NCBI RefSeq assembly: GCF_902713615.1
Contig: NC_052158.1
Coordinates: 52,918,823-52,982,822, forward strand
Reading direction: 5' to 3'
Source of the DNA: Scyliorhinus canicula
Lineage: Eukaryota
Length of the DNA stretch: 64,000 nt
This document shows, piece after piece, positions 2,514 to 63,764 of this stretch. A program made the translations under genes and the position numbers. Under the pieces are notes generated by a model, which was given only the letters and a program-made list of their open reading frames with translations, ran no database searches and was not told the origin of the DNA. Each line of letters opens with the position of its first letter. Position 1 is the first letter of the stretch.

Positions 2514-2562
2514 CTGCAGAGACCGCTCCACACAGAATGACAAGCAACATTAATCTCCTCAT
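2514..2562 (-). CDS. Leader (signal peptide) exon 1 of an MHC class I-like heavy-chain gene
   Basis: Minus strand ATG AGG AGA TTA ATG TTG CTT GTC ATT CTG TGT GGA GCG GTC TCT GCA G|GTGAGT = MRRLMLLVILCGAVSA plus phase-1 donor. Hydrophobic core with small-residue cleavage site; X-Y modules upstream; class I-type tail exons at the other end of the window. The lineage cannot be assigned from the leader. Confidence 0.75.
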
Positions 2563-2678
2563 TGTTGCTTCCCTGGACAGTGTTTGGTGAGGTTTTGTTT
2601 GATGAGGTTGCGGAAAATCCTCATCGAACAGACAGCCGCTGTTGATCCTGTCCTATTGGTTTACTGGTAAATCAGTCT

Positions 2679-2720
2679 CCAATTGGAATAAAGAGTCTGT
2701 TTGAGCCATCAGTCTCTGAG
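2679..2720 (-). promoter_or_regulatory. Proximal X-Y-like module
   Basis: Minus strand CTCAGAGACTGATG (2707-2720), 20 nt, CCAATTGG (2679-2686); same spacing as the distal module. Confidence 0.55.
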
Positions 2721-2758
2721 TAGAAGAGGTTTGGATAGGTTGCGTTAGTGAAAATTAT

Positions 2759-2800
2759 CCAATCAGAAAAATACTTTCAATTACATCATCAGTCGCTGTG
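2759..2800 (-). promoter_or_regulatory. MHC SXY-type X1/X2-Y module (RFX/CREB/NF-Y)
   Basis: Minus strand CACAGCGACTGATG-ATGTAATTGAAAGTATTTTT-CTGATTGG: X1-like 14-mer, CRE-like TGATGTAA, perfect Y box after a 20-nt spacer, as in mammalian MHC promoters (consensus recalled, not aligned). Confidence 0.8.
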
Positions 2801-2857
2801 AGTAAACTTTACAATCAAACAAGAAATTGAATGTAGTTTGATCCGAACTTGACAGAA

Positions 2858-3070
2858 TAAAGAACATTCGGAACAGCGAGAGACCATTCAGCCCCTCGGG
2901 CCCTGCTGCACCATCCAATCAGATCCTGACTGATCTGTGTATGAACTCCATTTACTCCATATTCCCTCATACTCCAACCCAACAACAATCTGAGCCTGAA
3001 AATATCCAATTGTTCCAAATTCCACAGCGGCAACCCTTTGAGTGAAAATAGCTTCTCTATGTCTGTCCTA
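2858..3070 (-). mobile_element. Degenerate CR1 3' end
   Basis: AGAACAT...GGAACAG...GACCATTCAGCCCCTCG pattern of reverse-complemented CR1 tails seen elsewhere in the window. Confidence 0.5.
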
Positions 3071-3942
3071 TCAAATCCTGGTTAACATTTGTAATAACTC
3101 CCGTGAGGCCCAGGCCCTTGATTGATTCCCCCCCCCCCCCGCGAAGGGGTGGAATTTGAGCTTCCTCACCGGTGGGCGGAGGCCTGCTGCAGCTGGGGCT
3201 GAGCAGAAACCAGAATAAAGGCTGGCCCAGAGAGGGAGCATCATGCTGCTTTGCCCAACAACACTGTACTCTGGAAATACTGTGCTGCCATGGCCAGAAT
3301 TGGTGTGAACGTGAATAAATAAATAAAACTTTTTTTTGCCATTTTCAGAGTTATGTACATTTGCTGTTCACTTTTATTTATTATATAATGTAAAAACAGG
3401 CTTTGTCTGACTTTCCATTATTTCCATATTGTTGCCGTCTGGTTCGGTGTGTTCTCCCCAGCCCCCTTTTCCCTAACCTCCCCCCTGCCCAACCACCCCC
3501 CCCCCCCCCCTCCCCCGACGGTCCTCCCTGGTCGATCTGGGGGAGGGGGGTGGGGTGCGCCCCCTTCTCCTTGTTCCCCCACTCCTATTTCTGTTCTTCC
3601 TCCGTATGTTTCAGCTGTGTTCTTTTTGTGGATTGGGGAGTTTGCCCCCCTCCCCCCTATCTCTAGTGTTGTCTCACTTTGTCCCTCTCAGGCTCTCTGC
3701 CGCCTTCTCCCCTCACCCCTCCTCCCTGGGTAGTGCGTTTCTGGAGGTCCTCCTTGTCCGTCTTTCTTTTCCCGTTTCCCTTTCTACTGGCTGTTGCTGG
3801 CCTCGAACAGGTTTTGGAACAGACTGACAGATTGCCCATATGCAGTGAGGAAGCCTTCCTCCCACCCTCAGATGGCATAATTCATCTTCTCCAGGTGGAG
3901 GAATTCCGAGAGGTCAGCGAGCCAGTCTGCAGCTGTGGGTGG

Positions 3943-4268
3943 CAGCGCCGGCCCTAGGGTTGCTGGCGCCCCGGGCAAGCTGAACTTCAGCACCCTTGGG
4001 GGGGGGGGGGGGCGGGGCGAGGCAGGGGGGGCGAGGGGCAGGGGGGGGGGGCGAGGGGTGGACGGAGGGGGGGGGCGAGGGGTGGACGGAGGGGGGGGCG
4101 GCCGGAGGGGGGGGGCAGAGGGGGCCGCCCTGGGGGAGAGCGGCCACCGCGCATGCGCTGGTTGGCACCGGCCCAAATGCGCATGCGCGGGACCCGAGTC
4201 TCTGGCGCCCCCGAGCACATGGCGCCCCGGGCGACTGCCCGAGTTGCCGGTACCTTGGGCCGGCCCTG
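3943..4268. mobile_element. hAT-type MITE inserted in the L1
   Basis: TIRs CAGCGCCGGCCC / GGGCCGGCCCTG (11/12 match) and an 8-bp TSD GTGGGTGG at 3935-3942 and 4269-4276. Confidence 0.88.
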
Positions 4269-5760
4269 GTGGGTGGCGTTGCTGATCGCCAGCCGAGCAG
4301 GATTCTCCGGTGTGCGATGAGGGAAGCGAAAGCAAGGATGTCGGCTCTCTTCCCCATGTGTAGCTCTGGCTACTCTGATACCCAGAAGATTGCCACATTT
4401 GGGCATGGCTTCACCCTTACCCCCACAACCTTAGACATTGCCTCGGAGAAGGCTGTCCAGAAGCCAACAAGTTTGGAACAAGGCCAGAACAAGGATGTGG
4501 TTGGCCAGGCCCCTCTGGCACGGTTCACATTTGTGCTCTACCTCTGGGAAGAACCTGCTCATTCGGGTTCTGGTCAGGTGCGCTTTGTGCACTACTTTGA
4601 ACTGCATGAGGGTGAGCCCTGTGCAGGAGGAGGTGGAGTGCTCAGTGCTTCGCTCCAGAGTCCCCACCCCACTTCTGTCCCCAGTTCGTCCTCCCATTTC
4701 CTTCTGGTCTCGTCCAGTGGTGTTTGGGCTGTGTACAGTAACTCTCTGTACATTTTCCCACAGAGTCCCTCTTCCTTATTGTCCATGCTCAGCAGGTGAT
4801 CTCCAGGGCCCATGGGTATCATGCTGTCTCTTTGCAGAGGAAGTGTTTTATTTGTAAGTGCCTCATTTCCTGTCCTCTCGGTAGTTCCCATTCCTCTGTC
4901 AGTTTGTTCAGCGTCGCTATTCTGTGTCCTGTGTAGAAGTCCCTGACTGTCAGCATTCCCTGTCCTGTCTCCATTCTTTAAAAGTTGCCTCCAGCATGGT
5001 TGGCGGGAATCTGTGGTTCCCGTAGATGGGGGCCAAGGGGGGTGTTTTGGTCAGCCCGAAAGGCTGGTTTAGTTGGCCCCACGTTTTTAGTGTAGCCGCT
5101 ACCACTGGGCTCGATGTGTATTTCGTCGAGGGGGATGGGAGTGCTGTCGTGGCGAGGGTCCGGAGGGCCGTCCCCTTGCAGGAGGCCTCCTCCATTTGCA
5201 TCCATTCCGAGTTGGGTGTGTGCCCTCAGCCTCTCACTCTTTCCGCTGTTGCCGCCCAGTGGTAATATTGCAGGTTTGGCAGTGCCAGGCCTCCCTTCAT
5301 TTGCCGTGTTGATTTGGGGACTCTTGGATTCTTGCCTCCCCACACAAACACCATAATCAGACTATCTTCATTTTGGAAGAAGGCCTTAGGTATGAAGATC
5401 GAGATGGATTTCCGCCATGGTATTTTTTATAACGTTTGTGTCGTCCCAGCAGGGAGCATACACGTTCACCGGTGACCCTCCCAGGATGCCGCTGACCATG
5501 ACATACCCTCCCCCTGGGTCCGTAATCGTCCTAGTCTCCGTGAATCTCGCCTCCTTGTTGATCAATATGGCTACACCCCTAGCCCTCGATCCATAGCGTG
5601 AATGGTACATCTGTCCCACCCAGCCCTTCCGTACCAGTAATATGTCCTTCTCCCTCAGGTGTGCCTCCTACAAGTAGACTATGTCCGCCTTCAGGCTTCT
5701 CAGGTGTGAGAAGACTCTGGATGTTTTCACTGGGCCATTAAGTCCCATTCCATTCACACT

Positions 5761-5925
5761 GGGCTAAATCCCTGGCTTTGAAAGCAGACCAAGGCAGGCC
5801 AGCAGCACGGTTCGATTCCCGTAACAGCATCCCCGAACAGGTGCCGGAATGTGGCGACTAGGAGCTTTTCACAGTAACTTCATTGAAGCCTACTCCTGAC
5901 AAGAAGCGATTTTCATTTAATTTAA
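5761..5925 (+). mobile_element. tRNA-derived SINE with (ATTTC)n-type tail (second SINE family)
   Basis: GGGCTAAATC..GCTTTGAAAGCAG..GGTTCGATTCCC..GAAGCCTACT..AAGCGATTTTCATTT; same family reversed at 20185-20368 and 62973-63130. Confidence 0.8.
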
Positions 5926-6869
5926 TTTCATTCCGGGTAACAATCCTGGTGGGGGGGTTTCTGTTCCCCCGGTCCTGTGGGGTCACCCATACTTACCTGT
6001 TGGATGTGCCCCTGCACTCTGAGGTTTCCCTTTGTTAGGGGACCGTCCAAAATGGTCGCGATCGCTGCTCTCACCATGAGGGTTTCCCTTTGTCCAGGGG
6101 CCACCCAACATGGCCGCCAACTGTGTGGATGCCAGGTCGGTGCGCCCCTGCACTCAGGGGCACCCCTTTGTTTTGGGGACCCTCCAAAGTGGCTGCTTGC
6201 CACGCCATCTTGATTCCTCAGCCTGCCCCATGCCTGCCGAGGCTGGCACCTGTTTCGCTGCCAACCCTTTACTGTCTTTCTGCCCCTTTTCTGTTCTGTG
6301 TATTCCCCCCTCTTGTGCCTCTCCACCCCTTGACCAGATGCTCCCTCTCCCCTAAGAGGTGTGCCGCGGCCCCTTTACTGCTTGTCTTCCCGTTCTAGCC
6401 CTCCCTGCTAGTAGGGTGGCTTCCCCCTAGACTGATCTCGCCCTGTCCCTATTCTGTCTGCCTGTCTCCGTTCTCTTCCTCGCCCCCTCACCTGTTTGCC
6501 CTGTCTTCTCTCCCTTCTTTCTGTCTTCCTACTTTAATCCGAGATCGAGGCAGCACAGTCCCGCGCAAGCACAGAATCCATACAATCCAGTCCCAATTCG
6601 TCCTCTGCTTTCTGTCTTTTTCCCTCTGGCCCTCACCGTTGCTGCATTTGTTCCTTCTCTCGGTTGTTCATTTTCACGACCTCCTCAGCCTCCGCCGGGG
6701 TGCCGAAGTATTGTTCTTTCCCCTTGTATGTTACCCAGAGTCTGGCCGGAAACATGCCAAACCTCACCCCACTCTTACAGAGTACCGATTTTGCTTTATT
6801 AAATATGGCTCTCTTTTTTGCAAAGTCCACCCCAGTGTCCTGATAGACCCTTAATTCTGTGTCCTTCCC

Positions 6870-7991
6870 AGGAGTACAACCTCTGCACCTGCGCAGTGTG
6901 TGTTTCGGCCGCTTCATTATCCCATTCGCATCGCGCATGCGTCGCGTCCCGGGAAGAGCGCGCAAAATGGCCGCTTTCATCAATGTTGAGGCGTTGCATC
7001 CGGGAGATGGTCTGCACACTCTCCGCCTCGTGGGAGGCTAGTTTATCATTTTCTGCCATTTTGTACTGGGAATAGCGATTTTCAGCGTGCTCATGCACAG
7101 TGCGTGTTTCAATCGCGACTGGCAGGGTCATATCCTCTCTGAGGATCAGAGTGAACTCCAAAAACGATTTGGTCTCTGATCATGGAGTCAGTGATACCAC
7201 TGAAGTTGCGGGATTGCACTAGCAGTCTAAGGTTAGTTAAGTATGAGTTGAAGGATTCGTCTTTACCTTGCAATTGCTGCTTGAATATGTAGCGCTCGAA
7301 GATCTCGTTGGTGTCCACCTCACAGTGGCTGTCAAACTTGTCCAGGATGGTCTGAAACTTTGTCTTGCCGTAGTCTTCGGCGAAGTGGAAGGAGTTGAAT
7401 ATTTCCAAGGCATGATCACCAGCTGTGGTGAGGAAAAGAGCTATCTTCCGTGCATCAGGCACACCATTGAGGTCTGATGCCTCGACGTAAAGCTGAAATT
7501 TCTGCTTGAATGTCCGCCAGTTGGCACTGAGATTGCCGGAGGTCCTGAGCTGGTGAGGAGCCTGAATCTTTTCCATTGTGCCGGTATACATTCGCTGGTT
7601 GTCACGGATCTTGTTGAGTTGAACTAATTAGACTGAACAGACACCTAGTATCATGTTGTGTTATGTAATTTGGAATGACACAAGCTGCCACTTGATGCAG
7701 TTTTGAGTAAAAGATGCTCCAGATGTTTTATTGAACTATTAGCACAGTTCTCAATGAGTTTGACTCTCTGCTAATCAAAATGTAGTAACTCAGTCTAACT
7801 GAACCAGCCTTGCTCTAAGCCACGTGCTGGGGTGTGATGCTGAGGATATGCCCTGTCTCACTCTGTAGATCTTGGTCTGTGGAAAGTGCCTCACCCCTTT
7901 TATCGTGAGACACCACCCCTCAGTGTCCTGACTGTTCATTGGTCGTGTCCTATTCTATTTGTTCATTAGCTGCATTTTGCATATCATGACA
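6870..7991 (-). mobile_element. gag: Gypsy family A 5' fragment: LTR (7654-7991), degenerate PBS, gag
   Basis: TG..CA bounded LTR followed on the minus strand by TGATACTAG; ORF 7109-7591 (QLRTSGNLSANWRTFKQKFQLY..MIRDQIVFG) homologous to gag at 8980 and 51666. Confidence 0.85.
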
Positions 7992-8190
7992 GGAGAGACT
8001 CTGTGGGGGAGACACTGAGGCAGGGAGGTACTCTGAAAGGAGGACACACTGCGGGGGAGAGATACTCTTGAGGCTGGGAGACAGTCTGAATGGGGAGACA
8101 CTCTGAAAGGAGGGATACACTGACAGGAAGAGAGATACTCTGAGGGGGAGGGAGACACTCTGAGGGGAGAGACACTCTGAGGCAGGCAAC
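7992..8190. repeat. Degenerate ~20-25 bp purine-rich tandem repeat
   Basis: Recurrent GAGACACTCTGAGGGGA motif. Confidence 0.7.
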
Positions 8191-9294
8191 ACTAAGTGGG
8201 TTTTGTAACATCTCTGACACCCAACTACCTGTTGCTGTTTTTGAAATAACAGCAACAAGATTTAAATCCTGGTTTGTGAGAGATTCTGCTGAATAGAAAC
8301 CAGTTTGATCAACAACTTCCTGAATGAGTTCAGGGACTTTCCAACTGAGAGAAACAGAAGGGAGGGGCAGAGACTGGGGAAATCCAGATAAAACTAGACT
8401 GAAGAGTGGGAGGAGATTGTGAACAGTGGTTAGGATTTGTAACAGGCTCATAGAAATCACAGAGAACTCAACTCAACTGTCCTCACTTGGGGGTGTGTGG
8501 GGTGTCATAATATACATCCATGTATATGACGGAGTGCAGACAAGCAGTGGTTGACACACAGGATGACCAGTGAGCACAGAGAACACAGCAGCCAATCACC
8601 AGACAGGACACTATAAAGCCAGAGGGCACCAGTTTTCCCGCTCTCTTGGGATCCAGCCTCTGAGACAGTCAGAGCTCGTGAGCAGCAACTAGAACAAACA
8701 CCATGTGGAAGTCAGTTAGTCTGGTCAGGTTAGCCTCAGGTCCCCAGTCAAGTCAGCATAGTGTCAACCCACAGTTGAGCATGTAATATAGTTAGATGTT
8801 AAATAAAATTGTGTTGCATCTCATCCAGTGTTTGAAGCCTGTCTCTCTCTACACTGCATCAAATGCAGTCCACATAGACCCAGCTTACCCAACACACAAT
8901 GGTACCAGGTCTGGATGTTGAGAATTGATGGACTCACCTTGAGGTAATCTACCTTGACCAGCAATCAGCCATCCGGTAACATGGACAGCATCCGCCCTCC
9001 TCCGCAGCTCCGCATCGCCGGCAACCTCGGTGAAAACTGGGATAGTTTCAAGCAGAACTTCCAGCTGTATCTTGAAGCTACTGACCTCAAGGCCGCATCA
9101 GATGCCAGGAAGATCGCACTCTTCCTTTCTACAGCCGGGGACCACGCTATCCACATCTACAACTCCCTCACATTCGCTGAAGGCGAAGACAAGGCGAAAT
9201 TTAAAACAGTCCTGCTGAAGTTGGACAGCCACTGCAACATTGAGGTGAATGAGAGCTTTGAACGGTACATTTTCCAGCAGAGGCTTCAGGGTAG

Positions 9295-9560
9295 AACATA
9301 GAACATAGAACATAGAACAGTGCAGCACAGAACAGGCCCTTCGGTCCCCAATGTTGTGCCGAGCCATGATCACCCTACTCAAACCCACGGATCCACCCTA
9401 TACCCGTAACCCAACAACGCCTCCCCTAACCTTACTTTTTAGGACACTACGGGCAATTTAGCATGGCCAATCCACCTAACCCGCACATCTTTGGACTGTG
9501 GGAGGAAACCGGAGCACCCGGAGGAAACCCACGCACACAGGGGGAGGACGTGCAGACTCC
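9295..9560 (-). mobile_element. 5'-truncated V-SINE in Gypsy gag
   Basis: (AGAACAT)n tail plus reverse core; gag resumes after an imperfect CAGGGTA/CAAGGTA duplication. Confidence 0.88.
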
Positions 9561-12440
9561 AAGGTAAGGATGAACCTTTTCAGTCCTTTTTGACCCATCT
9601 CCGCATCCTCGCGCAGTCATGTAACTATGACTCGACAACTGATTCCATGATCCAGGATCAGATCGTTTTCGGGGTCCACTCCGATTCCCTTTGCCAGGAG
9701 CTCCTGAAAGTTAAGCAGCTCACCCTCACCATCGCCATTGAAACGTGTGTTCTTCACGAGCACGCTAACAACCGGTACTCCCACATCAGGGCGGCAGAAA
9801 CGGAAAAGTTAAACCCCCACGATGCAGAATGGGTGCAGGCTATCGCATCTTGATGACAGTGGCCATTTTGCGCGCTTTTCCCTGGCTCCAGCGCATGCGC
9901 ACCATGACCGAGGGGACGGTGAGACCGACGACCAGCCTGCGCAGATGCGTACATCGTTCCACCGCACTGCGCATGCATGTTGGCGCACGGAACGCGCTGA
10001 CGTCGGTGTCATGACGTGTCTGAATTGTGGCTCCGCCCATTTAAAACAGCAATGTCCGGCAAAATCACAACACTGTCTCCAGTGTGGCAAGCTTGGCCAC
10101 TACGCAGCTCTTTGCAGATCTGCTCCACTGCCCAACATCCAGCAATCCCAGCCACGGCGCAGAAGCGTCCGTTCGGTACAGCAACTCTCACAGACTCCGA
10201 TCCCGACAGCCCACCAGATGCTGAGTGCCTCAAAACCCCATTCCGGGTGGGCATCATTACTAAGCATGCGCTGCCTCTCTCAACGATGGTGAAACACCTC
10301 CCAATCCTGAGCATTGATCCGGAAAACGAGTAGTGTGCTACCCTTACTGTTCGCATCCGTTTCAAACTGGACACCGGCGCTTCAGCAAACCTCACTTCAA
10401 AATCTGACCTTGACACCATCCGCGTCAGACCAAGCATTCTTCTACCGGCCTGCCAGCTCCTCGACTACAATGGCAATGCCATTGCTGCCAGTGGCTCATG
10501 CCAGCTTGCGGTGTCCATTAGGTCATTGAAAGCAACGCTGTAATTTGAAATCGTAGGCCCTGACAGAGCATCCCTGCTCGGTGCTCGGGCCTGACAGAGC
10601 ATCCCTGCTCGGTGCTCGGGCCTGCAAACTCCTGAACCTGGTTCAGCGAGTCCACACCATGTCATCCGCACAGGCAACGGCCTCACCTGATGAAAACTTC
10701 CAGGCTCAACTTGATGACATCATAGCGAAATACCAGAGCGTGTTCGAAGGTATGGGCACACTCCCATACAGATACAAAATCCTGCTTGAGCCAAACGCTA
10801 CCCTTGTGGTTCATGCACCGTGTTGGGTGCCGGCACCCCTCAAGGATCGCCTCAAGCAGCAGTTGCAAGACCTCCAGGACCAGGGCATCAAATCAAAGGT
10901 CACGGAACCCACGGACTGGGTTAGCTCCATGGTTTGCGTCAAGAAACTGTCAGGGGAGCTTCGAATCTGTATCGACACCAAGATTTAAACCGCAACATCA
11001 TGAGGGAACATTACCTAATACCAAAATGAGAGGAGTTAACCAGCGAGGTTGCTCATGCCAAATTCCTCACGAAGCTGGATGTCTACAAGGGGTTCTGGCA
11101 AATACAGCTGGACACGTCCAGTCACAAGCTGTGCACATTCAATACCCCATTCGGTCATTACTGCTACAACCGAATGCCCTTTGGCATCATCTCTGCCTCA
11201 GAGGTATTTTACTGCATCATGGAACAAATGATGGAGGGCATCGAGGTAGAGCGAGTGTACGTCGACGATGTGATAATCTGGTCCACAACTCCTCAAGAAC
11301 ACATTGATTGCCTCAACCGGGTGTTCCACAGGATCCACGAGCATGGCCTCCGACTCAACAGGGCCAAATGCTCATTCGGTCAATCAGAAATCAAATTCCT
11401 CGGCGACCACATCTCGCAACAAGGCGTGCAGCTGGATGCTGACAACGTTTCGGCGATCAACGCCATGAAGACCCCAGAGGACAAGAAGGCGGTCCTCCGC
11501 TTTCTAGGGATGGTCACCTTCCTTGGGAAGTTCATCCCCAACATGGCGTCCCACACCACAGCCCTCCGCCATCTCGTTAGAAAAACGACGGATTTCCAGT
11601 GGCTGCCCGCTCATGAGAAAGAATGGCGTGAGCTAAGGGCGAAACTCACCAAGGCCACGGTGCTGGTATTTTCCGACCCTGCCAAGGAAATAAAAATAGC
11701 CACTGAAGCGAGCCAGGATGGTATTGGGGCAGTACTCCTCCAGCGGGATCCCTCCTGGGCCCCAGATGCAGATGCCTCTAGAGCTATGACGTCCACTGAG
11801 CAACGATACGCTCAGATTGAGAAGGAATGCCTGGGCCTCCGGACGGGAATCGACACGTTCCATGATTATGTATATGGCCTCCCCTAATTCACGGTTGAGA
11901 TGGACCACAGGCCATTGGTTCACATCATCCAAAAAGACCTCAATGACATGACGCCACGGTTACAACGCATCCTTCTCAAGCTGCGCCGCTACGATTTTGA
12001 CCTGGTTTACACCCCGGGCAAAGAGATCTTTGTTGCCCATGCACTCTCCAGGTCTATCAACACACTGTGTGAGCAGACTGACATTGTCTGTCAAATAAAC
12101 GCGCAGGTGCAATTCTGTGCCTCCAACTTCCCGGCCTCTGATGAGAGGGTCATTCAAATTCGTGAGGAGACGGCCAGGGATCCTCTGCTCCAGTGGGTGA
12201 TGCAACACCTCATGAATGGCTGGCAGAAGGGGCAGTGTCCCCAGTTTTACAATGTCAAGGACGATCTGACGGTGGTCGGCGGCATCCTCATGAAGCTTGA
12301 CAGAATTGTGATCCCACAGAGCATGTGAGATTTGGTGCTCGGCCAAATGCACGAGGGTCACCTGGGGGTCGGGAAATGTCGCCGTCGAGCTCAAGAGGCA
12401 GTATACTGGCCAGACATCAGCCAAGACGTCGCCAATACGG

Positions 12441-12803
12441 CAGCACGGTAGCATTGTAGGGCAGCACGGTAGCATTGTGGATAGCACAATCGCTTCACAG
12501 CACCAGGGTCCCAGGTTCGATTCCGGCTTGGGTCACTGTCTGTGCGGAGTCTGCACATCCTCCCCGTGTGTGCGTGGGTTTCCTCCGGGTGCTCCGGTTT
12601 CCTCCCACAGTCCAAAGATGTGCAGGTTAGGTGGATTGGCCATGCTAAATTACCCTTAGTGTCCAAAATTTCCCTTAGTGTTGGGTGGGGTTACTGGGTT
12701 ATGGTGATAGGGTGGAGGTGTTGACATTGGGTAGGATGCTCTTTCCAAGAGCCGGTGCAGACTCGATGGGCCGAATGGCCTCCTGCACTGTAAATTCTAT
12801 GTA
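12441..12803 (+). mobile_element. V-SINE with duplicated 5' head, in Gypsy pol
   Basis: TSD AATACGG at 12434-12440 and 12804-12810. Confidence 0.92.
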
Positions 12804-13677
12804 AATACGGTCCTCAATTGCCCTACCTGTCAAAACTTCCAGCCGGCTCAGCCTAAAGAAACTCTACAGCAACATGAGATGGTGACCTCCCCATGGTCCA
12901 AAGTCGGTGTTGACCTGTTCCATGCCAAGGGGCGTGACTATGTCCTCCTAGTGGACTGCTTTTCCAATTATCCCGAAGTGGTCAGACTGTCTGACCACAC
13001 GTTGGCGGCGGTGATCAAGGCATGCAAGGAAACTTTTTCCCGACATGGGATACCACTCACGGTGATGAGTGACAACGGCCCCTGTTTTTTCAGACAGGAT
13101 TGGTCAGATTTTGCCAGGCTGTACAACTTTCAGCACGTCACATCCAGCCCCCACTACCCCCAGTCGAATGGGAAGGTTGAAAAATACATCGTCAAAAGAT
13201 TATTGTGTAAGGCTGCTGACTCGGGCTCCGATTTCAACCTGGCGCTGTTGGCATACAGAGCGACCCCTCTGTTCACTGGGTTGTCTCCAGCACAGCTCCT
13301 CATGAACCGCACACTGCGAATGACGGTTCCGGCCATCGAACACAGCAGCCAATCACCAGACAGGACACAACCACTATAAAGCCAGAGGGTACCAGTTTTC
13401 CCGCTCTCTGGGGATCCAGCCTCTGAGACAGTCAGAGCCCGTGAGCAACAGCCAGTGCAAACACCATGTGGTAGTCAGTAAGTCTGGTCAGGCTAGCCTC
13501 AGGTCTCCAGTCAAGTCAGCATAGTGTCAACCCACAATTAAGCATATAATATAGTTAGATGTTAAATAAAATTGTGTTGTATCTCATCAAGTGTTGGAAG
13601 CGTGTCTCTCTCTATATTGCATCAAACGCAGTCCACATTGACCCAGCTTACCCAACACATCATGGGGTAATGCCTGT

Positions 13678-13691
13678 TTGTGTGAGTGTGT

Positions 13692-13722
<31 letters not shown>

Positions 13723-13725
13723 GGG
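13678..13725. repeat. (TG)n microsatellite plus G run
   Basis: Directly visible. Confidence 0.95.
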
Positions 13726-54829: not shown

Positions 54830-55470
54830 ATGTGATGAGATGTTTATGTACGGAATACCGGCTCAGTAAAAATTCTGATAACGGGCCTCATTTTATTGGA
54901 CAGATTAACAAGGAGCTCCCAGTTGGGCATACGCCAGCAGTTACACTGTGCGTACAGACCGCAGGTGGCTGGGTTGCTTGAGAGACACAATCAGACCCTC
55001 AAAACTAAATTGGCTAAATTAAGAGCGGACACGGGACTGACATGGCTTAAGTTGCTCCCCGTTGCCCTCTTCCAGCTGTGGGTCACACCTGCAGGATCGG
55101 CCTGGCTCTCTCCTGCCGCGATCTTTTACGGCAGGCCCATTAGAACACCCTGGAACCTGCCTGTTCCCAGACTGGTCCAGTTTCACCATATGTCTAAAGA
55201 AAGGACTAACTATGTTCTAGCCATCACTAACGCCCTCAAGGAGCTCCATGGCCAGGTCTGCACAGCTCACCTGTCACTGTCCCCATTACATAGCTCACTT
55301 TCAGTGCAGCCTGGTAGCTATGTCATGGTTAAGAACTGGATTCGGAAGGGGTTGGAGCCATGGTGAACGGAGCCCTTCCAAGTTCTCCTTACCACCCGCA
55401 CTTCAGTTAAAGTGGAGGGGCGGAGTGCTTGCGTCCATCTCCACCACTGCACAATGGTCGGTCACTAACC
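54830..55470 (+). pseudogene. pol: ERV integrase, catalytic and C-terminal half
   Basis: YGIP..SDNGPHFIGQ, AYRPQVAGLLERHNQTLK, LSPAAIFYGRP, QPGSYVMVK, PFQVLLTT (several frameshifts). Confidence 0.88.
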
Positions 55471-55508
55471 TGCCTCCTTTCGCCAGCGCTGTTTTACAGG
55501 TGTGGAGC

Positions 55509-56921
55509 ATGACGGATTGGATACGGGCCGCCTGTGCTGTCCTCAGCTTCGCCTCACTTGGAACACCATCTATACCTGTAATCCCGACCAAACTACAAGG
55601 ACATTTCACTTATGCAGAGGTGACGTTCTCCGATGCCCCCATGTACGAGGGCACAGTATCGACTCATGGAAGGTTATCAAGTTAAAGGACAATGAAGGGT
55701 TCATGAAACACTTATATCGGTCCCGGCGTTGGGACGGGAACATTGCATGGACATTGCCTTGTTTTGGAGTAAATGTACATTTGCTTTTGGATGTAATAAG
55801 ACTGGTGCCATAAAGGTAAAATCAGGCCGTGTTTGGGGGGGGGGGGTGCGTAGGAAAAGGTTGTAGGGGAGAGAGGAGGAATAGCAAGGGGACGGAACGA
55901 GTAAGAAGGGAGGCACAACGAGAACACAGGTTATCAGGAGGTATACTTCACTTAGGACCCAGAACGAAGGGAACCTGGGCAGCATGAATCTCTTCTACCA
56001 AATCCACCACCACATGTATGGCCAGGGACCGGTTGCCTGCTACCCAAACCCCGCATTGGTATCTAGGTTATTCTCTGTCTCACCACTTTGGGGAACTCCC
56101 CGAAACAGTGGCTCACTGTCAGAGTTCCGAGCCATCGCCCGAGCAAGTTACTCCTTATGATCCGGGTTCGGCCCTACCAGCTATTTGCCTTCCCCTCCCT
56201 CAGGATAATTCCCACTCACAGTATGATAGGCTGCAACGGTGCAGGGCGTATATACCAAGCCACTTCACTCCCAATAGAGACTCCCGGTCGTACGAGAATT
56301 GTTTCAGCAGTGAGGGGTACGGCTGTTTGCTGGTAGAGATGACAATGAATATAACATGTCTGTTCTCCACTTGTAATGATCCAAAGTGCCGCATAACCCT
56401 GATATCCGGTCAATGCGTCTGTTACAACGCCACTTTTGTCCCGCTGAACACAGGCCACCAGCTCCTTTGTGGCTGGGCGAATGTCTCTCATATCACTGTG
56501 GGAACTAGGGCTTTCCGTATTGCTAGGAGGCCCGAATGGGCGTTCCGAAGCTGGATGAACTGGGCTACTGGAGAATCCCTACTCCACCAGTACACAGAGC
56601 GAGGTGACTATTTTTAGTGGCACAGCGATCAATGTTTTGTCACCCCCATTTCCCCGCCGAATTGCTATTGGGAGTCTAGTCCCTACCACGGTCTCCTGCC
56701 CCTCTGCGTGGATACTGCACCACCAGTTGGCATGCTGGGCATGTTCAGTTATTTGTGGCCTTACCATCCTGGGCAACAAAACCTTGGGGGCCCTCGGGGT
56801 AATAACCAAGGAATTATCTCAACTGCAGTTGTTTGCCATGCAGAACCGGTATGCTCTTGACTATCTCACCTGCATCTTTATGGGCCTGGCCATCCTTAAA
56901 TGCGTGATGGGTAAAATGTAG
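55509..56921 (+). pseudogene. env: ERV envelope, frameshifted and partly deleted
   Basis: Signal-like MTDWIRAACAVLSFASLG, Cys-rich SU fragments, heptad NKTLGALGVITKELSQL and immunosuppressive-domain-like MQNRYALDYL; no CX6CC after the ISD. Confidence 0.82.
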
Positions 56922-58482
56922 GGTGCGCTGGAACAGATAGCCGCCCCTACTGTCTTGGCTGTTAGGGTCCACGAGGGTGCAGCGGATGATGGGGTGCTGC
57001 AATAGGATTTAGAAATGCAGCAATGAGTTTTCTTAGCTGAGGGGCCATAGCTACAGCTTGGACCCGATGGGTTATCATGAAATGATAAAAGGAGGGAATG
57101 AGGAAGTGAACAAACGAATATGATGGACAGTAGGACCCTGAGGGTAATGAGTTCACAGACAGAGAACAAAGGGATGAGCACAGCATGGCTAGGAAGGGGG
57201 AGGGGAGCTTTGCCTCGTGGAGAGAATGGTGAAAAGGATGCTGGGTAACAAGAGGCCCAGGATTGGGAAATGTGAAGTGAGCCAATCAGGATATATGGCC
57301 AGGTGAGAAGGTGTACAGAATGACCAATGGGAAGCTTGTATGCGAATCTTGATGTGATTCAATCAACATCTGCTGTGATTTCTTTGTTCTCTCCCTCATT
57401 AACTCTTGGGAGCTCCAGAAGACAGCTGCGTGTTCTAAGGTCCCACGAGTGAGTCAGCCTTGCAAGCTGGTGGAAATAAAACAATAATTGATACCTGCAG
57501 ATCCGTCTCAGATTTTATTGAGCCCAGACTGGTGAAAAGGATCAGGGATTGTCACGCACAAATTCCCTCATTTGTCTTTGAGTGGGCCAATCCATTCTCT
57601 CGTTACCCTCTTGTTCCTTTTATACGAATAAAAGGCTTTGGAATTTTCCTTAACCCTGTTAGCCAAAGATATTTCATGACCCCTTTTAGCCCTCTTTATT
57701 GCACGTTTGAGATTTGTACTACTTTCCCGATATTCCTCCAAAGATTCATCAGTATTAAGTCACCTAGATTTTATCTATGCTTCCTTTTTAATCTTAGCTA
57801 GTGTCACAATTCCACCCGTCATCTATGGTTCCCTCATCTTGCCATTTCTATCCTTCATTTTCACAGGGACATATCTGTCCTGCACTCTAATCAACCTTTC
57901 CTTAAGACTCCCACATTTCAAATGTGGATTTATCCTTGAACAACTGCTCCCAATCCACATTCCTGAGCTCCTGCCGAATTTTGTTATACTCTGCCTTTCC
58001 CCAATTTCGCACACTTCCTTTAGGACCACTCTCGTCTTTGTCCATGAGTATTCTAAAACTTATGGAATTGTGATCGCTATTCCCAAAGTAATCACCGACT
58101 GAAACTTCAACCACCTGGCCAGGATCATTCCCCAATACCAGGTCCAGTATGGCCCCTTCCCGAGTTGGACTATTTACATACAGCTCTAAAAAATTCGCCT
58201 GGATGCTACTTACAAACTCTGCTCCATCTACGCCTCCAACACTACATGAGTCCCATTCAATGTTGGGGAAGTTAAAATCTCCCATCACAACCACCCTATT
58301 GCTCCTACATTTTTCTATAATCTGTCTACATATTTGTACCTCTACTTCACGTTCGCTTTTGGGAGGCCTGTCGTAAAGTCCCAACAATGTTACTGCACCC
58401 TTCCTATTTCTTATCGCTAACCATATTGCCTCAGTAAGAAGTCTTACAACACCAGGTTAAAGACCAACAGGTTTGTTTCAAA

Positions 58483-58517
58483 CACGAGCTTTCGGAGCAC
58501 TGCTCCTTCGTCAGGTG
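58483..58517 (-). ncRNA. Minimal type I hammerhead ribozyme motif
   Basis: CAC-CUGACGA-AGGAGC-AGU-GCUCC-GAAA-GC-UC-GUG. Confidence 0.8.
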
Positions 58518-58752
58518 AATGGAGAGGTATGTTCTAGAAACATTTATATAGACAAAGTCAGAGATGCCGGACAATGCTTGAAATGCGAGCATTTGCAGGT
58601 AATAAAATCATTACAGATCCAGAGAGAGGGATAATGGGATAATCACAGGTTAAAGATCTAAGATTGATTACCTGCAAATGCTCGCATTCCAAGCATTGTC
58701 CGGCATCTCTGACTTTGTCTATATAAATGTTACTGGAACATACCTCTCCATT

Positions 58753-58787
58753 CACCTGATGAAGGAGCAGTGCTCCGAAAGCTCGTG
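58753..58787 (+). ncRNA. Minimal type I hammerhead ribozyme motif
   Basis: CAC-CUGAUGA-AGGAGC-AGU-GCUCC-GAAA-GC-UC-GUG; palindromic AGCU helix III. Confidence 0.82.
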
Positions 58788-59654
58788 TTTGAAACAAACC
58801 TGTTGGACTTTAACCCGATGTTGTAAGACTTCTTACTGTGCTCACCCCAGTCCAAACCCGGCATCTCCACATCATATTGCCTCAGTGCTCGAATCCTCCA
58901 TAGTGCCCTCCTTCAGCACAGCTGTGATATCCTCTCTGACCAGTAATGCAACTCCTCCACCCCTTCTACCTCCCTCTCTATCCCTCCTGAAGCATCTATA
59001 CCCTGGCATATTTAGTTGCCAATCTTGTCCTTCTCTAAACCAAGTCTCAGTAATACCAATAACATCATTAGCCCCAAGTTCATCTGCCTTACCTGCTACA
59101 CTTCTCGCATTAAAACAAATGCACCTCAGACAACCTGTCCCTTTGCGTTCATCATCTCTTCCCTGTCTACTCTTCTCCTTAGTCACAATGAGTTTATGAT
59201 CTCGTACCTTACTGGCTTTCGTTGCTGCCTCTTTACTGACCTCTAACTTCCTTATCTGGTTCCCATCCACCTGCCACATTATTTTAAAACCTCCCCAACA
59301 GTGTTAACAAAAGCTCCCTCTGGGACATTGGTTCCAGTCCCGCCCAGGTGTAGACCATCCAATTTGTAATGGTACCACCCCCCAGAACCGGTTCCAATGT
59401 CCCAAAAATCTGAACCCCTCCCTCCTGCATCATCTCTCAAGCCACCTATTCATTTTGACTATTAGGAGGATTGCATGGATGAGATCCAGTTTCGATTCAT
59501 GTCTGGATTACCTGGACAAATTGATCAGAATGGCCAGTCAGACTGAGCTGCCTCTTTCGCCATCCAATCAGAACCAGAGTTATCCTCTTGCTGGAACCCT
59601 TCTGTTCCGGCATCAACTTTATCATTTCCAATGAAACAGTTTTCCTCTACATTT

Positions 59655-60570
59655 AAAAAATAATAATTTATAGGATGTGGACGTCGATGGCTAGGCCACA
59701 TTTATTGCCCATCCCTAGTTGCTCTTCAGAGGTGGTGGTGAGTTGCATTCTTGAACCGCTGCAATTCCGGAGGTGTAGTTACACCCATAGTGCTGTTAGG
59801 GAGGGTGTTCTAGGATTTTGACCCAGTGACAGTGAAGGAACGGTGATATAATTCTGAGTCAGGGTGGTGAGGTTCCAAGATATCTGCTGCTCTTGTCCTT
59901 CTAAATGGTAGTGGCCATGGGTTTGGAAGGTGCTGCCTAAGGAATCTTGGGGAGTTCCTGCAGTGCATCTTGTAGATGGTACACATGCTGCCACTGTTCA
60001 TTGGTGGTGGAGGGTTTGAATGTTTGTGGAGGGGGGAGCAATCAAGCAGGCTGCTTTGTCCTAGATGGTGTCAAGCTTCTTGAGTGTTGTTGGAGATACA
60101 CTCATCCAGGCAAGTAGAGAGTATTGAGTTACACGCCTGACTTGTGCCTTATCGATGGAGAACAGGTTTTGGGGGTAGGGGGAGGGCTGAGTTACTCGTC
60201 GTAGGATTCCTAGCCTTTGACCTGTTCTGGTAGCCACAGCATTAATGCGGTTACTTTCTGATCAATGGTAACCGCCAGGATGTTGATTGTGGGGGATTCA
60301 GTGATGGTAATGCCGAATAATGTCAAGGGGTGATGGTTAGATCCTCTCTTGTCGGAGATGGTCATTGCCTGGCACTTGTGTGGCATGAATGTAACTTGCC
60401 ACTTGTCAACCCAAGCCTGGATATTGTTCAGGTCTTGCTGCATTTTGGACATGGACTGATTCATTGACTAAGGTGTTGCGAATGGTGCTGAACATTGTGG
60501 AGTCATCCGCAAACATCCCCACTTCGGACCTTAAGATGGAAGGGAGGCCAGTGATGAAGCAGCTGTTTCC
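59655..60570 (-). mobile_element. CR1/L2-group LINE RT 3' remnant (also 52118-52311)
   Basis: MQQDLNNIQAWVDKWQVTFMPHKCQAMTIS (60210-60464). Confidence 0.75.
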
Positions 60571-60694
60571 ATAGTCACCAAAATAGATCTGTGTACGAGA
60601 TATATTCCAGAATCAATCTCCTTTTATTATCAGGGCATCTTTCCTGGCAGATCAGTGAATTGTGACACGGCCAGTTTGAGCAATGCTCTGAGAA

Positions 60695-60990
60695 AAAGCA
60701 AATTATTTTGGTTTCTGAAATCTGAAACAAAAACAGAAAATACTGGACAATTGCTTTGACAAAAGGTCATCTGACTTGAAACGTTAGCTCTTTTCTCTGC
60801 CTACAGATGCTGCCAGAGCTGCTGAGATCTTCCAGCATTTTCTTTTTTGATTTCAGATTCCAGCATCCGTAGTAATTTGCTTTTATATTGGACAATCGAT
60901 GCAGGTCTGACAGCATCTGTGAAGAGAGAAGGGAGCTAATGTGTTGAGTCTGCAAAGACAAAATTTGAGTGGATGACTCTTTGTTGAGTA
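60695..60990. mobile_element. Palindromic Penelope-type short repeats, degenerate
   Basis: CAGATGCTGCCAGA..CCAGCATTTTC family as at 44881-45294; centre TTGACAA-AAGGTC..GACTT-GAAA-CG-TT. Confidence 0.6.
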
Positions 60991-61048
60991 ACACACTGCT
61001 GGCTCAATGCCGAGTTTAATATAGCAATGCCTATTCTTGAGTACAGTA

Positions 61049-61398
61049 AGAACATAGAACATAGAACAGTACAGCACAGAACAGGCCCTTCGGCCCTCAA
61101 TGTTGTGCCAAGCCATGATCACCCTACTCAAACCCACGTATCCACCCTATGCCCGTAACCCAACAACCCCCCCTTAACCTTACTTTTTGTAGGACACTAC
61201 GGGCAATTTAGCATGGCCAATCCACCTAACCCGCACATCTTTGGACTGTGGGAGGAAACCGGAGCACCCGGAGGAAACCCACGCACACAGGGGGAGGACG
61301 TGCAGACTCCACACAGACAGTGACCCAGCCGGGAATCGAACCTGGGACCCTGGAGCTGTGAAGCATTTATGCTAACCACCATGCTACCCTGCTGCCCC
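61049..61398 (-). mobile_element. V-SINE
   Basis: Reverse full-length copy with (AGAACAT)n tail. Confidence 0.92.
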
Positions 61399-61409
61399 TT
61401 TTTATAACA

Positions 61410-61584
61410 CCAGAAGTTTTATAACACCAGGTTAAAGTCCAACAGGTTTGTCTGAAATCACTCGCTTTTGGAGTGTAGCTCCTTCAACAGGTGAGTCTCC
61501 AAAAGCTAGTGATTCCAAATAAATCTCTTCGGTGTTGTAAGACTTTTTACTGTGCCCACCCCAGTCCAACGCCAGCATCTCCAT
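61410..61584. mobile_element. Degenerate Penelope-type inverted remnant
   Basis: CACCAGGTTAAAGTCCAACAGG.. and ..GGTGTTGTAAGACT..CCCCAGTCCAACGCC, same family as 58436-58872. Confidence 0.75.
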
Positions 61585-62560
61585 TTCGGAGAATGCTGGC
61601 CAAGTGTTGACGCCGGCGTCAAAACAGTTCGCGAGGGAAGTCGGCATCAACAGGCCTCCAAGCCCGGTCATTCTCCTGTTCCTCAGGGGCTAGTACGATG
61701 CCGAGTGCTGTGCGCTGCTCCGGTGCCGAACGCCGGCCCGACACGGGATTCACGGATCCGCGCATGCGCGCTACGGCCGGCGCGGGTCCGCAAATACGTG
61801 TGGTTGGCCCTCTCCGCGCCGGCCCCAGGGCAACATGGTAGAGCCCTACAGGGCCCTGGCATGGAGGGACATAGGCCTCCCACCCCTGGAATGAGCCCGC
61901 CCGCTGATCGGTAGGCCCCGGTCGCCAGCCTGGCCACTGTGGAGAACCCCAGGAGTCGGATCCCCCTGTCCCCCCACCAAGACGGCCCCGCAGCCAGGAC
62001 TCCGAGGTCCCACCGGGTCGGACCATATGTAAACCATGCCGGCTGGAGTCGGCCAGACTCGGCGGGCACTCAGCACGCTGAGAGCGGAGAATCGCCGCGG
62101 GGGCCGCTTTCAATTTCCAACCAGCGTAGCGTCGACATTGGCGGGCCTGGCGTCGGAGTGGCCTGGGCGTGATTCCCCCCCCCCCCCCGGGCGATTCTCC
62201 GACCTGGTGCAGGATCGGAGAATCCTGGCCCATATTTTTAGGTAGAAGATATTGTTTAATGAACCATTAATGGACTCCTCGCCCTCCATCAGTTCAAGAG
62301 ACAAGATCAAGATCTGACCCGCCGCACCTGTTTTCTGGTGTCCGGGAAAGGAGCGCCCCCCTCGCGCCCCCCCCCCCCCCCCCGCGCCCCTCGCGCCCCC
62401 ACCCCCCCCCCCCCCTCCCTCCGCCGGCAGCGGAATCCTTCGTCCTGCCACCCGGAAAATGGTGTTTCCAATTGTGGGCACCCCCACGCCATCGGGAAAT
62501 CTGCGGGGTGAGTGTGCTGCCTGCGAAACAGAGGATCGCGCTGATGGAGATTCCAGCCCC
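61585..62560. mobile_element. Two GC-rich MITE-like elements (61585-62231, ~62310-62560)
   Basis: Right ends GGAGAATCCTGGCCC and GGAGATTCCAGCCCC. Confidence 0.65.
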
Positions 62561-62879
62561 ATAGCTCTGTTGAGCAAGGAGGAAACAGAGTGGCTGAATG
62601 GCCTCCCTGTGGTTTTCTACGCAAGTATATGTGTGCAATAGGAAGGAGCAGCAATGAACAGTGAGCAGCCGTGGCAGAATGAAAGGAGGAGGAGGATACT
62701 GTCAGAATTATTCATGTCATTATTGGAGCCTAACACTAGGCATGGAAACTAAGCTTTCACTGAATGAGTAATGGATTCAAGCAGCAAGTCTGTGATGGTC
62801 TTGATCTCGTCAGATAACCAGATAACTTGGTTCAGTGTAATTTCAGCCGGTGTTGGACTCCAGTGAGTAACCCCGTACC

Positions 62880-62926
62880 TCAGGCCTGGACTGATGAGTT
62901 TGAGGATGATTTTTCTTTCTCAATGG
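62880..62926 (-). CDS. Last coding (cytoplasmic) exon of an upstream MHC class I-like gene
   Basis: Acceptor CCTTTTCACAG, phase 1, (A)IEKEKSSSNSSVQA*TGA; a GAG|GTACGG donor one base after the stop would make a 48-nt exon. Confidence 0.72.
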
Positions 62927-62972
62927 CTGTGAAAAGGAAAGATTTCTGTTAAACAGATGTTTACAACTTGAA

Positions 62973-63700
62973 AAATGAAATGAAAATCGCTTATTGTCAC
63001 AAGTAGGCTTCAATGAAGTTACTGTGAAAAGCCCCTAGTCGCCACATTCTGGCGCCTGTCGGGGATCGAACCGTGTTGCTGGCCTGCTTTAAAAGCCAGC
63101 GATTTAGCCGAGTGAGCTAAACCAGCCCCTTGTGGGATGTTCTGCTCAGAGTCAGAGACAGTTCTAAACAAAGCTGACAGCAGAACGGTGGCACAGTGGT
63201 TAGCGCCCAGGTTCAATCGTGGCTCTGGGTCACTGTCCGTGCGGTGTTTGCACATTCTCCCCGTGTTTGCATCGCTCTCACCCCCCACAATCCAAAGATG
63301 TGCAGGATAGGTGGAATGGCCTCAGTAAATTGCCCCTTAATTGGGAAATAAAAGAATTGGGTACTCTCAATTTTCTTTTATATAAACAAGGCTGACAGGC
63401 ACAAGTTTGTCTAATAATAATCTTTATTGTCACAAGTAGGCTCACATTAACACTGCAATGAAGATACAGTGAAAAGCCTCGAGTCGCCACATTCTGGCGC
63501 CTGTTCAGGTACACAGAGGCAGAATTCGGAATATCCGAACCACCTAAGCTGCACATCTTTGGACTGTGGGAGGAAACCGGAGCAACGGGAGGAAACCCAA
63601 GCAGACACGGGGAGAATGTGCAGACTCCTCACAGACAGTGACGCAGCGGGGAATCAAACCTGGGACTCTCGAGCTGTGAAGCAACACACTCTGATACTGA
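62973..63700. mobile_element. Cluster of three SINEs (62973-63130 minus, 63180-63385 plus, 63400-63700 minus)
   Basis: Heads, cores and tails of both SINE families. Confidence 0.8.
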
Positions 63701-63728
63701 GTTGCCCCTTTACAATTTTTACACTTAC

Positions 63729-63764
63729 CAATTCCTGAACTGTAACCAGCTCTGTTCTTTCCTC
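63729..63764 (-). CDS. First cytoplasmic exon (exon 6-like) of the upstream MHC class I-like gene
   Basis: TTCTGTGCTTTGCAG|GAGGAAAGAACAGAGCTGGTTACAGTTCAGGAATTG|GTAAGT; 36 nt, phase 1-1, (G)GKNRAGYSSGI(A) with a GY motif. Confidence 0.75.

What the first reader, a model, noticed from the sequence alone, without database searches (positions are those of the whole stretch)
2514..63764. Hidden host architecture: spacer between two tandem MHC class I-like genes
Three tiny minus-strand exons are absent from the ORF track. They are a 49-nt leader exon with a phase-1 donor at the left edge, and 36-nt plus 47/48-nt tail exons at the right edge that splice in frame to GGKNRAGYSSGIAIEKEKSSSNSSVQA*. Exon sizes, phases, the GY motif and the Ser-rich end follow the class I exon 6/7 pattern. 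This implies a class I gene cluster with a spacer that is almost entirely TE-derived.
Basis: partly seen in the sequence, partly recalled or inferred. Interest (0 to 1): 0.75.

Follow-up and report, generated by a model that had tools for sequence, protein, structure and literature searches.

The report
Spacer between two catshark MHC-I genes
The three tiny exons are real and belong to two neighbouring MHC class I genes of the small-spotted catshark, separated by about 58 kb of transposon debris. Both genes are already in the NCBI annotation and in a published 2023 MHC map, so the finding is correct but not new.

Summary
Confirmed, but already known. The window is Scyliorhinus canicula chr13 (NC_052158.1) 52,918,823-52,982,822, inside the TAP1/PSMB8/TAP2-linked class Ia region.

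- **Right edge.** The 36-nt exon (63729-63764) and 48-nt exon (62879-62926) are coding exons 6 and 7 of LOC119976123. My exon-by-exon model also uses a leader, a1, a2, a3 and TM exon that lie 8-66 kb to the right of the window.
- **Left edge.** The 49-nt leader (2514-2562) is exon 1 of LOC119975604. Its a1 and a2 exons lie 3.6-6 kb to the left of the window.
- **Published labels.** Verissimo et al. 2023 (MBE) list these genes as 'MHC-Ia like' and 'MHC-Ia (partial)'. No gene is annotated between them.
- **Spacer.** At least about 93% of window 2854-60604 is repeat or TE sequence.

- The two genes are not recent duplicates. Their a1/a2 domains are 40-47% identical.
- The left gene has no a3, TM or tail exon in the assembly. 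An N gap sits where a3 is expected.
- The right gene's 3'UTR runs on to a poly(A) site at 60605.

Read laying failed, so splice junctions rest on RefSeq protein identity.

The parts
2514..2562 (-). Exon 1 (leader, 49 nt, phase-1 donor) of the left class I gene LOC119975604
   Evidence: Translation. Donor gtgagt seen. Identical to residues 1-16 (plus one base) of RefSeq protein P0188.
2563..2853 (-). 5'UTR and proximal promoter stretch of LOC119975604, up to the RefSeq gene end
   Evidence: The gene range 52909688-52921675 in Verissimo 2023 Suppl. File 2 puts the 5' end at window 2853. CCAAT/ATTGG boxes are visible; their function was not tested.
1936..2513 (-). Start of intron 1 of the left gene: a roughly 60-bp tandem array whose unit begins with the exon-1 donor (gtgagtaatgg...). 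Remnants lie at 1103-1259, separated by SINE insertions.
   Evidence: TRF finds 9.6 copies at 92% matches. The array is 90-93% identical to the 34-copy array after the right gene's leader.
63729..63764 (-). Coding exon 6 (36 nt, cytoplasmic, GGKNRAGYSSGI) of the right class I gene LOC119976123
   Evidence: AG/GT borders and phase 1 at both ends. It lies in RefSeq P0151 and P0002. The paralogue at 43.69 Mb has a 36-nt exon of the same phase.
62879..62926 (-). Coding exon 7 (AIEKEKSSSNSSVQA, stop TGA at 62880-62882) of LOC119976123. The 3' border is uncertain: a GT follows at 62877-62878.
   Evidence: The SSSNSS..QA end is shared with other shark class I proteins.
60605..62878 (-). 3'UTR territory of LOC119976123, either continuous or spliced. 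AATAAA at 60623-60628 lies 18 nt before the RefSeq gene end at 60605.
   Evidence: Gene start 52979427. The hexamer was read.
2854..60604 (.). Intergenic spacer of 57,751 bp with no annotated gene, almost wholly TE or repeat
   Evidence: 78% matches other sampled DNA or itself. Window 52461-57551 is a 5.1-kb dispersed repeat with about 5000 genomic candidates. ORFs in 40633-44214 are LTR-retroelement integrase and protease. No gene is listed between the two loci.
17359..20197 (+). Gypsy-type LTR retroelement ORFs (aspartyl protease, RNase H, integrase)
   Evidence: Pfam hits.
26158..29557 (-). LINE with a GDSL-esterase ORF1 and an endonuclease-RT ORF2
   Evidence: Pfam hits.
34928..38722 (+). 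Second LINE (endonuclease plus RT)
   Evidence: Pfam hits.
59528..59656 (-). Copy of the repeat that supplies the terminal coding exon of the left gene's RefSeq model
   Evidence: 95% identical in protein to P0188 residues 192-234. It lies within a 1.35-kb repeat that is 92% identical to C13 52909316-52910662.

Best explanation
The window is the transposon-filled gap between two head-to-tail (both minus-strand) MHC class I heavy-chain genes. They lie in the TAP1/PSMB8/TAP2-linked class Ia region of Scyliorhinus canicula chromosome 13.

Right gene (LOC119976123, 'MHC-Ia like'). It spans 69 kb and has 7 coding exons, one per domain, with every intron in phase 1:
- leader, 46 nt
- a1, 261 nt
- a2, 273 nt
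- a3, 273 nt
- connecting peptide plus TM, 126 nt
- two cytoplasmic exons of 36 and 48 nt

Only the last two exons and the 3'UTR lie in the window. The gene encodes a complete 353-aa membrane class I chain. That chain keeps 7 of the 8 residues that clamp peptide termini (Y7 is V), both disulfides and the N86 glycosylation site. Its tail carries the conserved GY and SSSNSS motifs. By inference from mammalian class I, these motifs serve endocytic sorting and phosphorylation.

Left gene (LOC119975604, 'MHC-Ia (partial)'). Its promoter, 5'UTR and 49-nt leader exon are in the window. Its a1 and a2 exons lie 6.1 and 8.3 kb downstream, outside the window. In this assembly the gene has no a3, TM or tail exon, and its RefSeq model ends in a repeat-derived exon.

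What is shown: the exon anatomy, the identity to RefSeq proteins, the linkage and the TE content. What is inferred: peptide presentation, beta2m pairing and the function of the tail motifs.
For: - Window placement on C13.
- MHC_I hits left and right of the window.
- An a3 exon and a TM exon found by open-frame and hydrophobicity scans.
- All exon borders are AG/GT and phase 1, and the conceptual protein is 353 aa.
- Pfam MHC_I and C1-set hits.
- The best solved structure by sequence is shark class I 6LUP.
- My model equals RefSeq P0151 exactly. Isoform P0002 carries the same tail. P0188 carries the leader, a1 and a2 of the left gene.
- The published gene table gives TAP1, PSMB8, TAP2, LOC119975604 and LOC119976123 in order, with nothing between the last two.
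- The a3 exon is held in full by 18 runs from 10 studies whose small contig sets look like transcriptomes.
- Conserved residues were checked.
Against: - No read-level splice evidence was obtained.
- Introns 1 and 3 of the right gene are very long (24.7 and 28.9 kb). The link from a2 to a3 therefore rests on the RefSeq model. A second RefSeq isoform skips a3.
- The left gene may be a fragment rather than a working gene.
- In an a1/a2-only tree, neither gene has a close orthologue.
Confidence: 0.93

Rival explanations
1. The left gene (LOC119975604) is a truncated relic or pseudogene. It kept its promoter, leader, a1 and a2 but lost a3, TM and tail, and its transcript now ends in a transposon-derived exon. 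On this reading the window separates one working class I gene from one fragment, not two working genes.
For: - No a3-, TM- or tail-like exon appears in 34 kb downstream of a2.
- RefSeq P0188 ends in 40 residues encoded by a repeat that also occurs at window 59528-59656.
- The F-pocket end is altered: T143A, K146Q, W147C, W167N.
- The RefSeq gene range (lower end 52909688) stops 3 bp past the last residue-coding base of the terminal exon (52909691). That looks like a weakly supported 3' end.
Against: - A 500-N stretch (C13 52911566-52912065) begins 705 bp after a2. In the compact paralogue at 43.69 Mb, a3 starts about 1.3 kb after a2, so a3 could simply be unassembled.
- The a1 and a2 reading frames and all of their splice sites are intact.
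- The published table calls the gene 'partial', not pseudo.
Confidence: 0.4
2. The right gene is a nonclassical (class Ib-type) molecule, not a peptide-presenting classical-type gene, despite lying in the class Ia region.
For: - Y7 is replaced by V, and positions 5-6 are unusual (W, L).
- It sits on a long branch with no close orthologue, even in S. torazame.
- The true Triakis-type UAA a3/TM lies elsewhere, at 51.95 Mb.
- The published label is only 'MHC-Ia like'.
Against: - It keeps Y59, R84, T143, K146, W147, Y159 and Y171, both disulfides and N86.
- It is linked to TAP2.
- Its a3 exon is present in many run assemblies.
Confidence: 0.5
3. The three short stretches are chance splice-like motifs in repeat-rich DNA.
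For: Each is only 36-49 nt long, and all lie among SINEs and satellites.
Against: - They match RefSeq proteins exactly.
- Their phases fit the flanking domain exons.
- The 36-nt exon and the tail motif are conserved in paralogues and in other sharks.
Confidence: 0.01

Closest known systems
NCBI RefSeq genes LOC119976123 and LOC119975604 of Scyliorhinus canicula (Annotation Release 100), mapped as 'MHC-Ia like' and 'MHC-Ia (partial)' in Verissimo et al. 2023, Mol Biol Evol 40:msad262 (PMC10751288)
   Same: They are the same loci. The proteins are identical to what the exons encode, and the coordinates match.
   Different: Nothing differs. This report adds only exon-level coordinates, the TE make-up of the spacer and the residue checks.
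Elasmobranch classical class I (UAA), e.g. Triakis scyllium O46836/O46840 and nurse shark UAA (solved structure 6LUP)
   Same: - One domain per exon, with the MHC_I plus C1-set plus TM plus short tail architecture.
- A GY...SSSNSS..A tail, R84 and N86.
- Linkage to TAP/PSMB8.
   Different: - Only 52-56% identity in a1/a2.
- The right gene's a3/TM is of the 'SCLVTGFYP' type, not the UAA 'SCVATGFYP' type.
- The UAA-type a3/TM of this genome sits at 51.95 Mb.
- The left gene lacks T143, K146 and W147.
'MHC-Ia-like' genes of sharks, e.g. S. canicula LOC119976219 at 43.69 Mb (P0183), S. torazame P0179 and Squalus acanthias Q8HWH7
   Same: - The a3 domain is 65-72% identical, and the TM and tail are of the same type.
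- The 36-nt exon 6 is the same size and phase.
- The same 61-bp array follows the leader.
- They fall in one well-supported clade in the full-length tree.
   Different: The a1/a2 domains are only about 54% identical, and the a1/a2-only tree leaves them unresolved. The grouping therefore comes from the 3' half of the protein.
Human HLA class I exon 6/7 layout (33 and 48 nt; Tyr320 and Ser-rich C-terminus). This comes from established knowledge, not from a test here.
   Same: Two tiny phase-matched cytoplasmic exons of 36 and 48 nt. They carry a Gly-Tyr and a Ser-rich end that align with the primate tail.
   Different: - The Pfam MHC_I C-terminus model does not recognise the shark tail.
- The stop codon lies in the 48-nt exon, not in a further exon.
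- Function was not tested.

Membership tests
MHC class I heavy chain | a1-a2 peptide-binding superdomain (Pfam PF00129) | tested here: met
   Right gene 147 bits and left gene 149.5 bits, against a cut-off of 28.3. Exon by exon.
MHC class I heavy chain | Membrane-proximal C1-set Ig domain (a3) with its disulfide | tested here: met
   Right gene only: C1-set at 50-54 bits, with C203 and C259 present. For the left gene none was found, and an N gap lies at the expected place, so that case is inconclusive.
MHC class I heavy chain | One exon per domain, all introns phase 1, and separate TM and short cytoplasmic exons | tested here: met
   Exons of 46/49, 261, 273, 273, 126, 36 and 48 nt, all with AG/GT borders and all phase 1.
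MHC class I heavy chain | a2 disulfide C101-C164 and N86 glycosylation site | tested here: met
   Present in both genes.
Classical (class Ia) MHC class I | Eight conserved residues that bind peptide termini (Y7, Y59, Y/R84, T143, K146, W147, Y159, Y171) | tested here: not met
   The right gene has 7 of 8 (Y7V). The left gene keeps only Y7, Y59, Y159 and Y171, with K84, A143, Q146 and C147.
Classical (class Ia) MHC class I | Close linkage to TAP1/TAP2/PSMB8 | tested here: met
   Published gene table: TAP1 at 51.63 Mb, PSMB8 at 51.74, TAP2 at 52.44-52.56, left gene at 52.91 and right gene at 52.98-53.05.
Classical (class Ia) MHC class I | High polymorphism and ubiquitous expression | not testable with these tools
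   There is one assembly only.
MHC class I heavy chain | Association with beta2-microglobulin and ligand binding | not tested
   No complex or structure job was run. B2M lies at 41.36 Mb on the same chromosome.
Pfam MHC_I_C (class I C-terminus) | Match of the cytoplasmic tail to PF06623 | tested here: not met
   No hit for P0151 or for its residues 320-353. In one search this domain was listed only for mammalian proteins. The resemblance is at motif level only.

The most novel reading that the evidence does not exclude
Two readings remain that my evidence does not exclude.

1. The left gene is not merely mis-assembled. It could be a naturally a3-less, anchor-less class I-like product made of leader, a1, a2 and a transposon-derived C-terminus.

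2. The tandem arrays built from the splice donor of exon 1 (and, in the right gene, of the a2 exon) may be kept alike between class I genes that have otherwise diverged to 40-47% identity. They would then act in the homogenisation or regulation of the leader/promoter modules across about 20 Mb of the shark MHC.
Probability: 0.1. Interest if true: 0.5.

Novelty: already known. Interest (0 to 1): 0.15.

Why it matters
It shows that a reader working from bare sequence can recover a class I gene pair from three exons of under 50 nt. It also pins the window to the heart of the catshark class Ia region.

Biologically it adds nothing beyond the RefSeq annotation and the 2023 MHC map. What it does add is exon-level coordinates and the observation that the spacer is nearly pure TE. 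It also gives a clearer view of how incomplete the class Ia genes are in this assembly:
- the left gene lacks its 3' half;
- the UAA-type gene at 51.95 Mb lacks a1/a2;
- both sit beside N gaps.

Anyone using sScyCan1.1 to count or type catshark classical class I genes should know this.

Tried and rejected
There is therefore no read-level junction evidence. One closed local script still held them inside the stitched region. They were masked from then on.
- **The look-up of encoding contigs** for P0151 found no record.
- **A genome-wide C1-set scan** was swamped by Ig loci and was useless for locating a3.
- **The left gene's a3, TM and tail** were searched by motif, tblastn and a genome protein search. 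Nothing was found down to C13 52878823.
- **Recent tandem duplication** was rejected. Only the leader, the intron-1 array and dispersed repeats are shared.
- **The two 'partial' class Ia entries (51.95 and 52.91 Mb) as halves of one gene** is unlikely. Each has its own leader/array module, and the left gene's a1/a2 are not UAA-like in the key residues.
- **Lineage names (UBA, UCA, UDA...)** could not be checked, because the two J Immunol papers are not held. I therefore assign no lineage name.
- **Pfam C-terminus family**: no hit.
Full report
**Placement.** The window is G000 contig C13, 52,918,823-52,982,822, plus strand, in a 4.22-Gb assembly. Protein hits name the species as Scyliorhinus canicula. 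The coordinates match NC_052158.1 (chromosome 13, sScyCan1.1) in Supplemental File 2 of Verissimo et al. 2023, PMC10751288.

**Observation.** Reading the minus strand gives three exons:
- A 49-nt leader at 2514-2562: ATG...GCAG|gtgagt, encoding MRRLMLLVILCGAVSA plus one base.
- A 36-nt exon at 63729-63764, between ...tgctttgcag| and |gtaagt.
- A 48-nt exon at 62879-62926, after ...ttttcacag|. Its TGA is at 62880-62882, and GT follows one base later.

At a 20-aa cut-off only a mechanical 96-aa ORF (63544-63834) happens to read the 36-nt exon in frame.

**Flanks.**
- A whole-genome scan with Pfam MHC_I found an a1 exon (C13 52914954-52915217) and an a2 exon (52912781-52913038) on the minus strand just left of the window. 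It found another a1/a2 pair at 53.023 Mb to the right.
- I fetched 40 kb to the left and 70 kb to the right.
- A motif scan found a C1-set a3 exon at 52993648-52993920.
- A hydrophobicity and splice scan found a connecting-peptide/TM exon at 52990591-52990716.
- A leader lies at 53048289-53048334.
- All borders are AG/GT and all introns are phase 1. Exon sizes are 46, 261, 273, 273, 126, 36 and 48 nt, and the concatenated frame is a 353-aa protein.
- Pfam confirms MHC_I and C1-set.
- The best solved relative by sequence is shark class I 6LUP.

**Identity with public models.**
- A search of 1.8 billion representatives with the a2 exon returned a 262-aa protein (P0002) at 100% identity. It consists of leader, a1, a2, TM and the two tail exons.
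[quoted passage not shown] It comprises the window's leader, a1, a2 and 40 further residues. Those residues are encoded at C13 52909691-52909819.
- The published table lists, in order:
  - TAP1 (51.63 Mb)
  - PSMB8 (51.74)
  - LOC119975867 'MHC-Ia (partial)' (51.95)
  - TAP2 (52.44-52.56)
  - LOC119975604 'MHC-Ia (partial)' (52909688-52921675, minus)
  - LOC119976123 'MHC-Ia like' (52979427-53048437, minus)
- No gene is listed between the last two. [quoted passage not shown]
- The finding is therefore correct, and already annotated and published.

**Gene ends inside the window.**
- The right gene's RefSeq 3' end is window 60605, with AATAAA at 60623-60628.
- The left gene's 5' end is window 2853.
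- The true intergenic span is therefore 2854-60604, or 57,751 bp.
- I could not tell whether the 3'UTR is spliced at the GT after the stop.
- The UAA-type gene at 51.95 Mb has a similar GT two bases after its stop. The 43.69-Mb paralogue does not.

**Spacer content.**
- Every long ORF with a Pfam hit is TE-derived. These are Gypsy-type protease/RNase H/integrase, two LINE endonuclease-RT units (one with a GDSL ORF1) and further integrase/RNase H pieces.
- 78% of the spacer matches itself or only 228 kb of other sampled DNA from this chromosome.
- The largest unmatched block (52311-57552) is a 5.1-kb dispersed repeat with about 5000 genomic candidates at 86-93% identity.
- The next largest (40551-44083) carries integrase and protease ORFs.
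- Together these make at least about 93% repeat or TE.

**Relationship of the two genes.**
- They share position and orientation but are not recent duplicates. Their a1 domains are 47% identical and their a2 domains 40%.
- At DNA level only the leader, the tandem array that follows it, and scattered TEs align.
- In a full-length tree both fall in a well-supported clade. That clade also holds the 43.69-Mb 'MHC-Ia like' gene, S. torazame P0179, Squalus Q8HWH7 and others. It stands apart from the Triakis/Heterodontus/nurse-shark UAA sequences.
- In an a1/a2-only tree both are long, unresolved branches. For the right gene the grouping therefore comes from a3/TM/tail.
- This genome's Triakis-type a3 and TM exons lie at 51.95 Mb, next to another N gap.

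**Residues.**
- The right gene keeps Y59, R84, N86, T143, K146, W147, Y159, Y171, C101-C164 and C203-C259. It has V at position 7.
- The left gene keeps Y7, Y59, Y159 and Y171. It has K84, A143, Q146, C147 and N167.
- The tail aligns with K..GY.PA...ESSSNSS.QA of other shark class I and, more loosely, with the primate GGSYSQA...S-rich tail.

**Incompleteness of the left gene.**
- No a3, TM or tail exon lies within 34 kb downstream of a2.
- A 500-N stretch (52911566-52912065) begins 705 bp after a2. This is about where a3 lies in the compact paralogue.
- The RefSeq terminal exon is part of a 1.35-kb repeat. That repeat is also present at window 59154-60458 (92% identical) and, more distantly, at 53.0486 Mb.

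**Expression.** The right gene's a3 exon is held in full by 18 runs from 10 studies. Their small contig sets suggest transcriptomes, but the tool only guesses that they are RNA.

**Verdict.** Novelty is nil at the level of genes. The mechanism is that of ordinary class I heavy-chain genes. The open points are whether the right gene is classical or nonclassical, and whether the left gene is complete.

Noticed in passing
window 1103-2513; L015:3421-5474 (C13 53046243-53048296): A 59-61-bp tandem array starts exactly at the exon-1 splice donor, and its unit begins gtgagtaatgg. The left gene has 9.6 copies plus remnants split by SINEs; the right gene has 34 copies. Arrays plus leaders are 90-93% identical between the two genes, although their a1/a2 proteins are only 40-47% identical. 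Similar arrays lie next to class I leaders at 43.686-43.689 Mb (84-86%), 32.1-32.5 Mb (75-77%) and 51.972 Mb.
   Followed up: partly
C13 52.194 Mb and 52.785 Mb (not fetched): Modules of promoter-like sequence (68-70% to window 2655-2867) plus the 61-bp array occur without any MHC_I exon detected nearby. They may be orphan class I leader modules between TAP2 and the left gene.
   Followed up: no
L012:9010-10000 (C13 53021832-53022822): About 26 tandem copies of a roughly 37-bp unit lie directly downstream of the right gene's a2 exon. The unit repeats the end of that exon and its donor (..gaaacc.ggtgagtgagagag). Two introns of this gene therefore open with arrays of their own donor site.
   Followed up: partly
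L025/L026 (C13 51948794-51954756; N run 51958308-51958807): The Triakis-type (UAA-like) a3 and TM exons of this genome sit at 51.95 Mb, with no a1/a2 in the assembly and an N gap 3.6 kb upstream. The left gene has a1/a2 but no a3, also beside an N gap. So both 'MHC-Ia (partial)' entries are incomplete in complementary ways.
   Followed up: partly
window 52461-57551: A 5.1-kb dispersed repeat without a Pfam-recognisable long ORF. It has about 5000 genomic candidates, and near-full-length copies at 86-93% identity lie on many chromosomes.
   Followed up: partly
P0002 versus P0151: RefSeq lists an a3-skipping isoform (262 aa) of the right gene. It joins a2 directly to the TM exon and stays in frame because all introns are phase 1.
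   Followed up: no
window 59154-60458 and C13 52909316-52910662: A 1.35-kb repeat, 92% identical between the two places, supplies the terminal coding exon of the left gene's RefSeq model. A copy lies just beyond the right gene's poly(A) site.
   Followed up: partly
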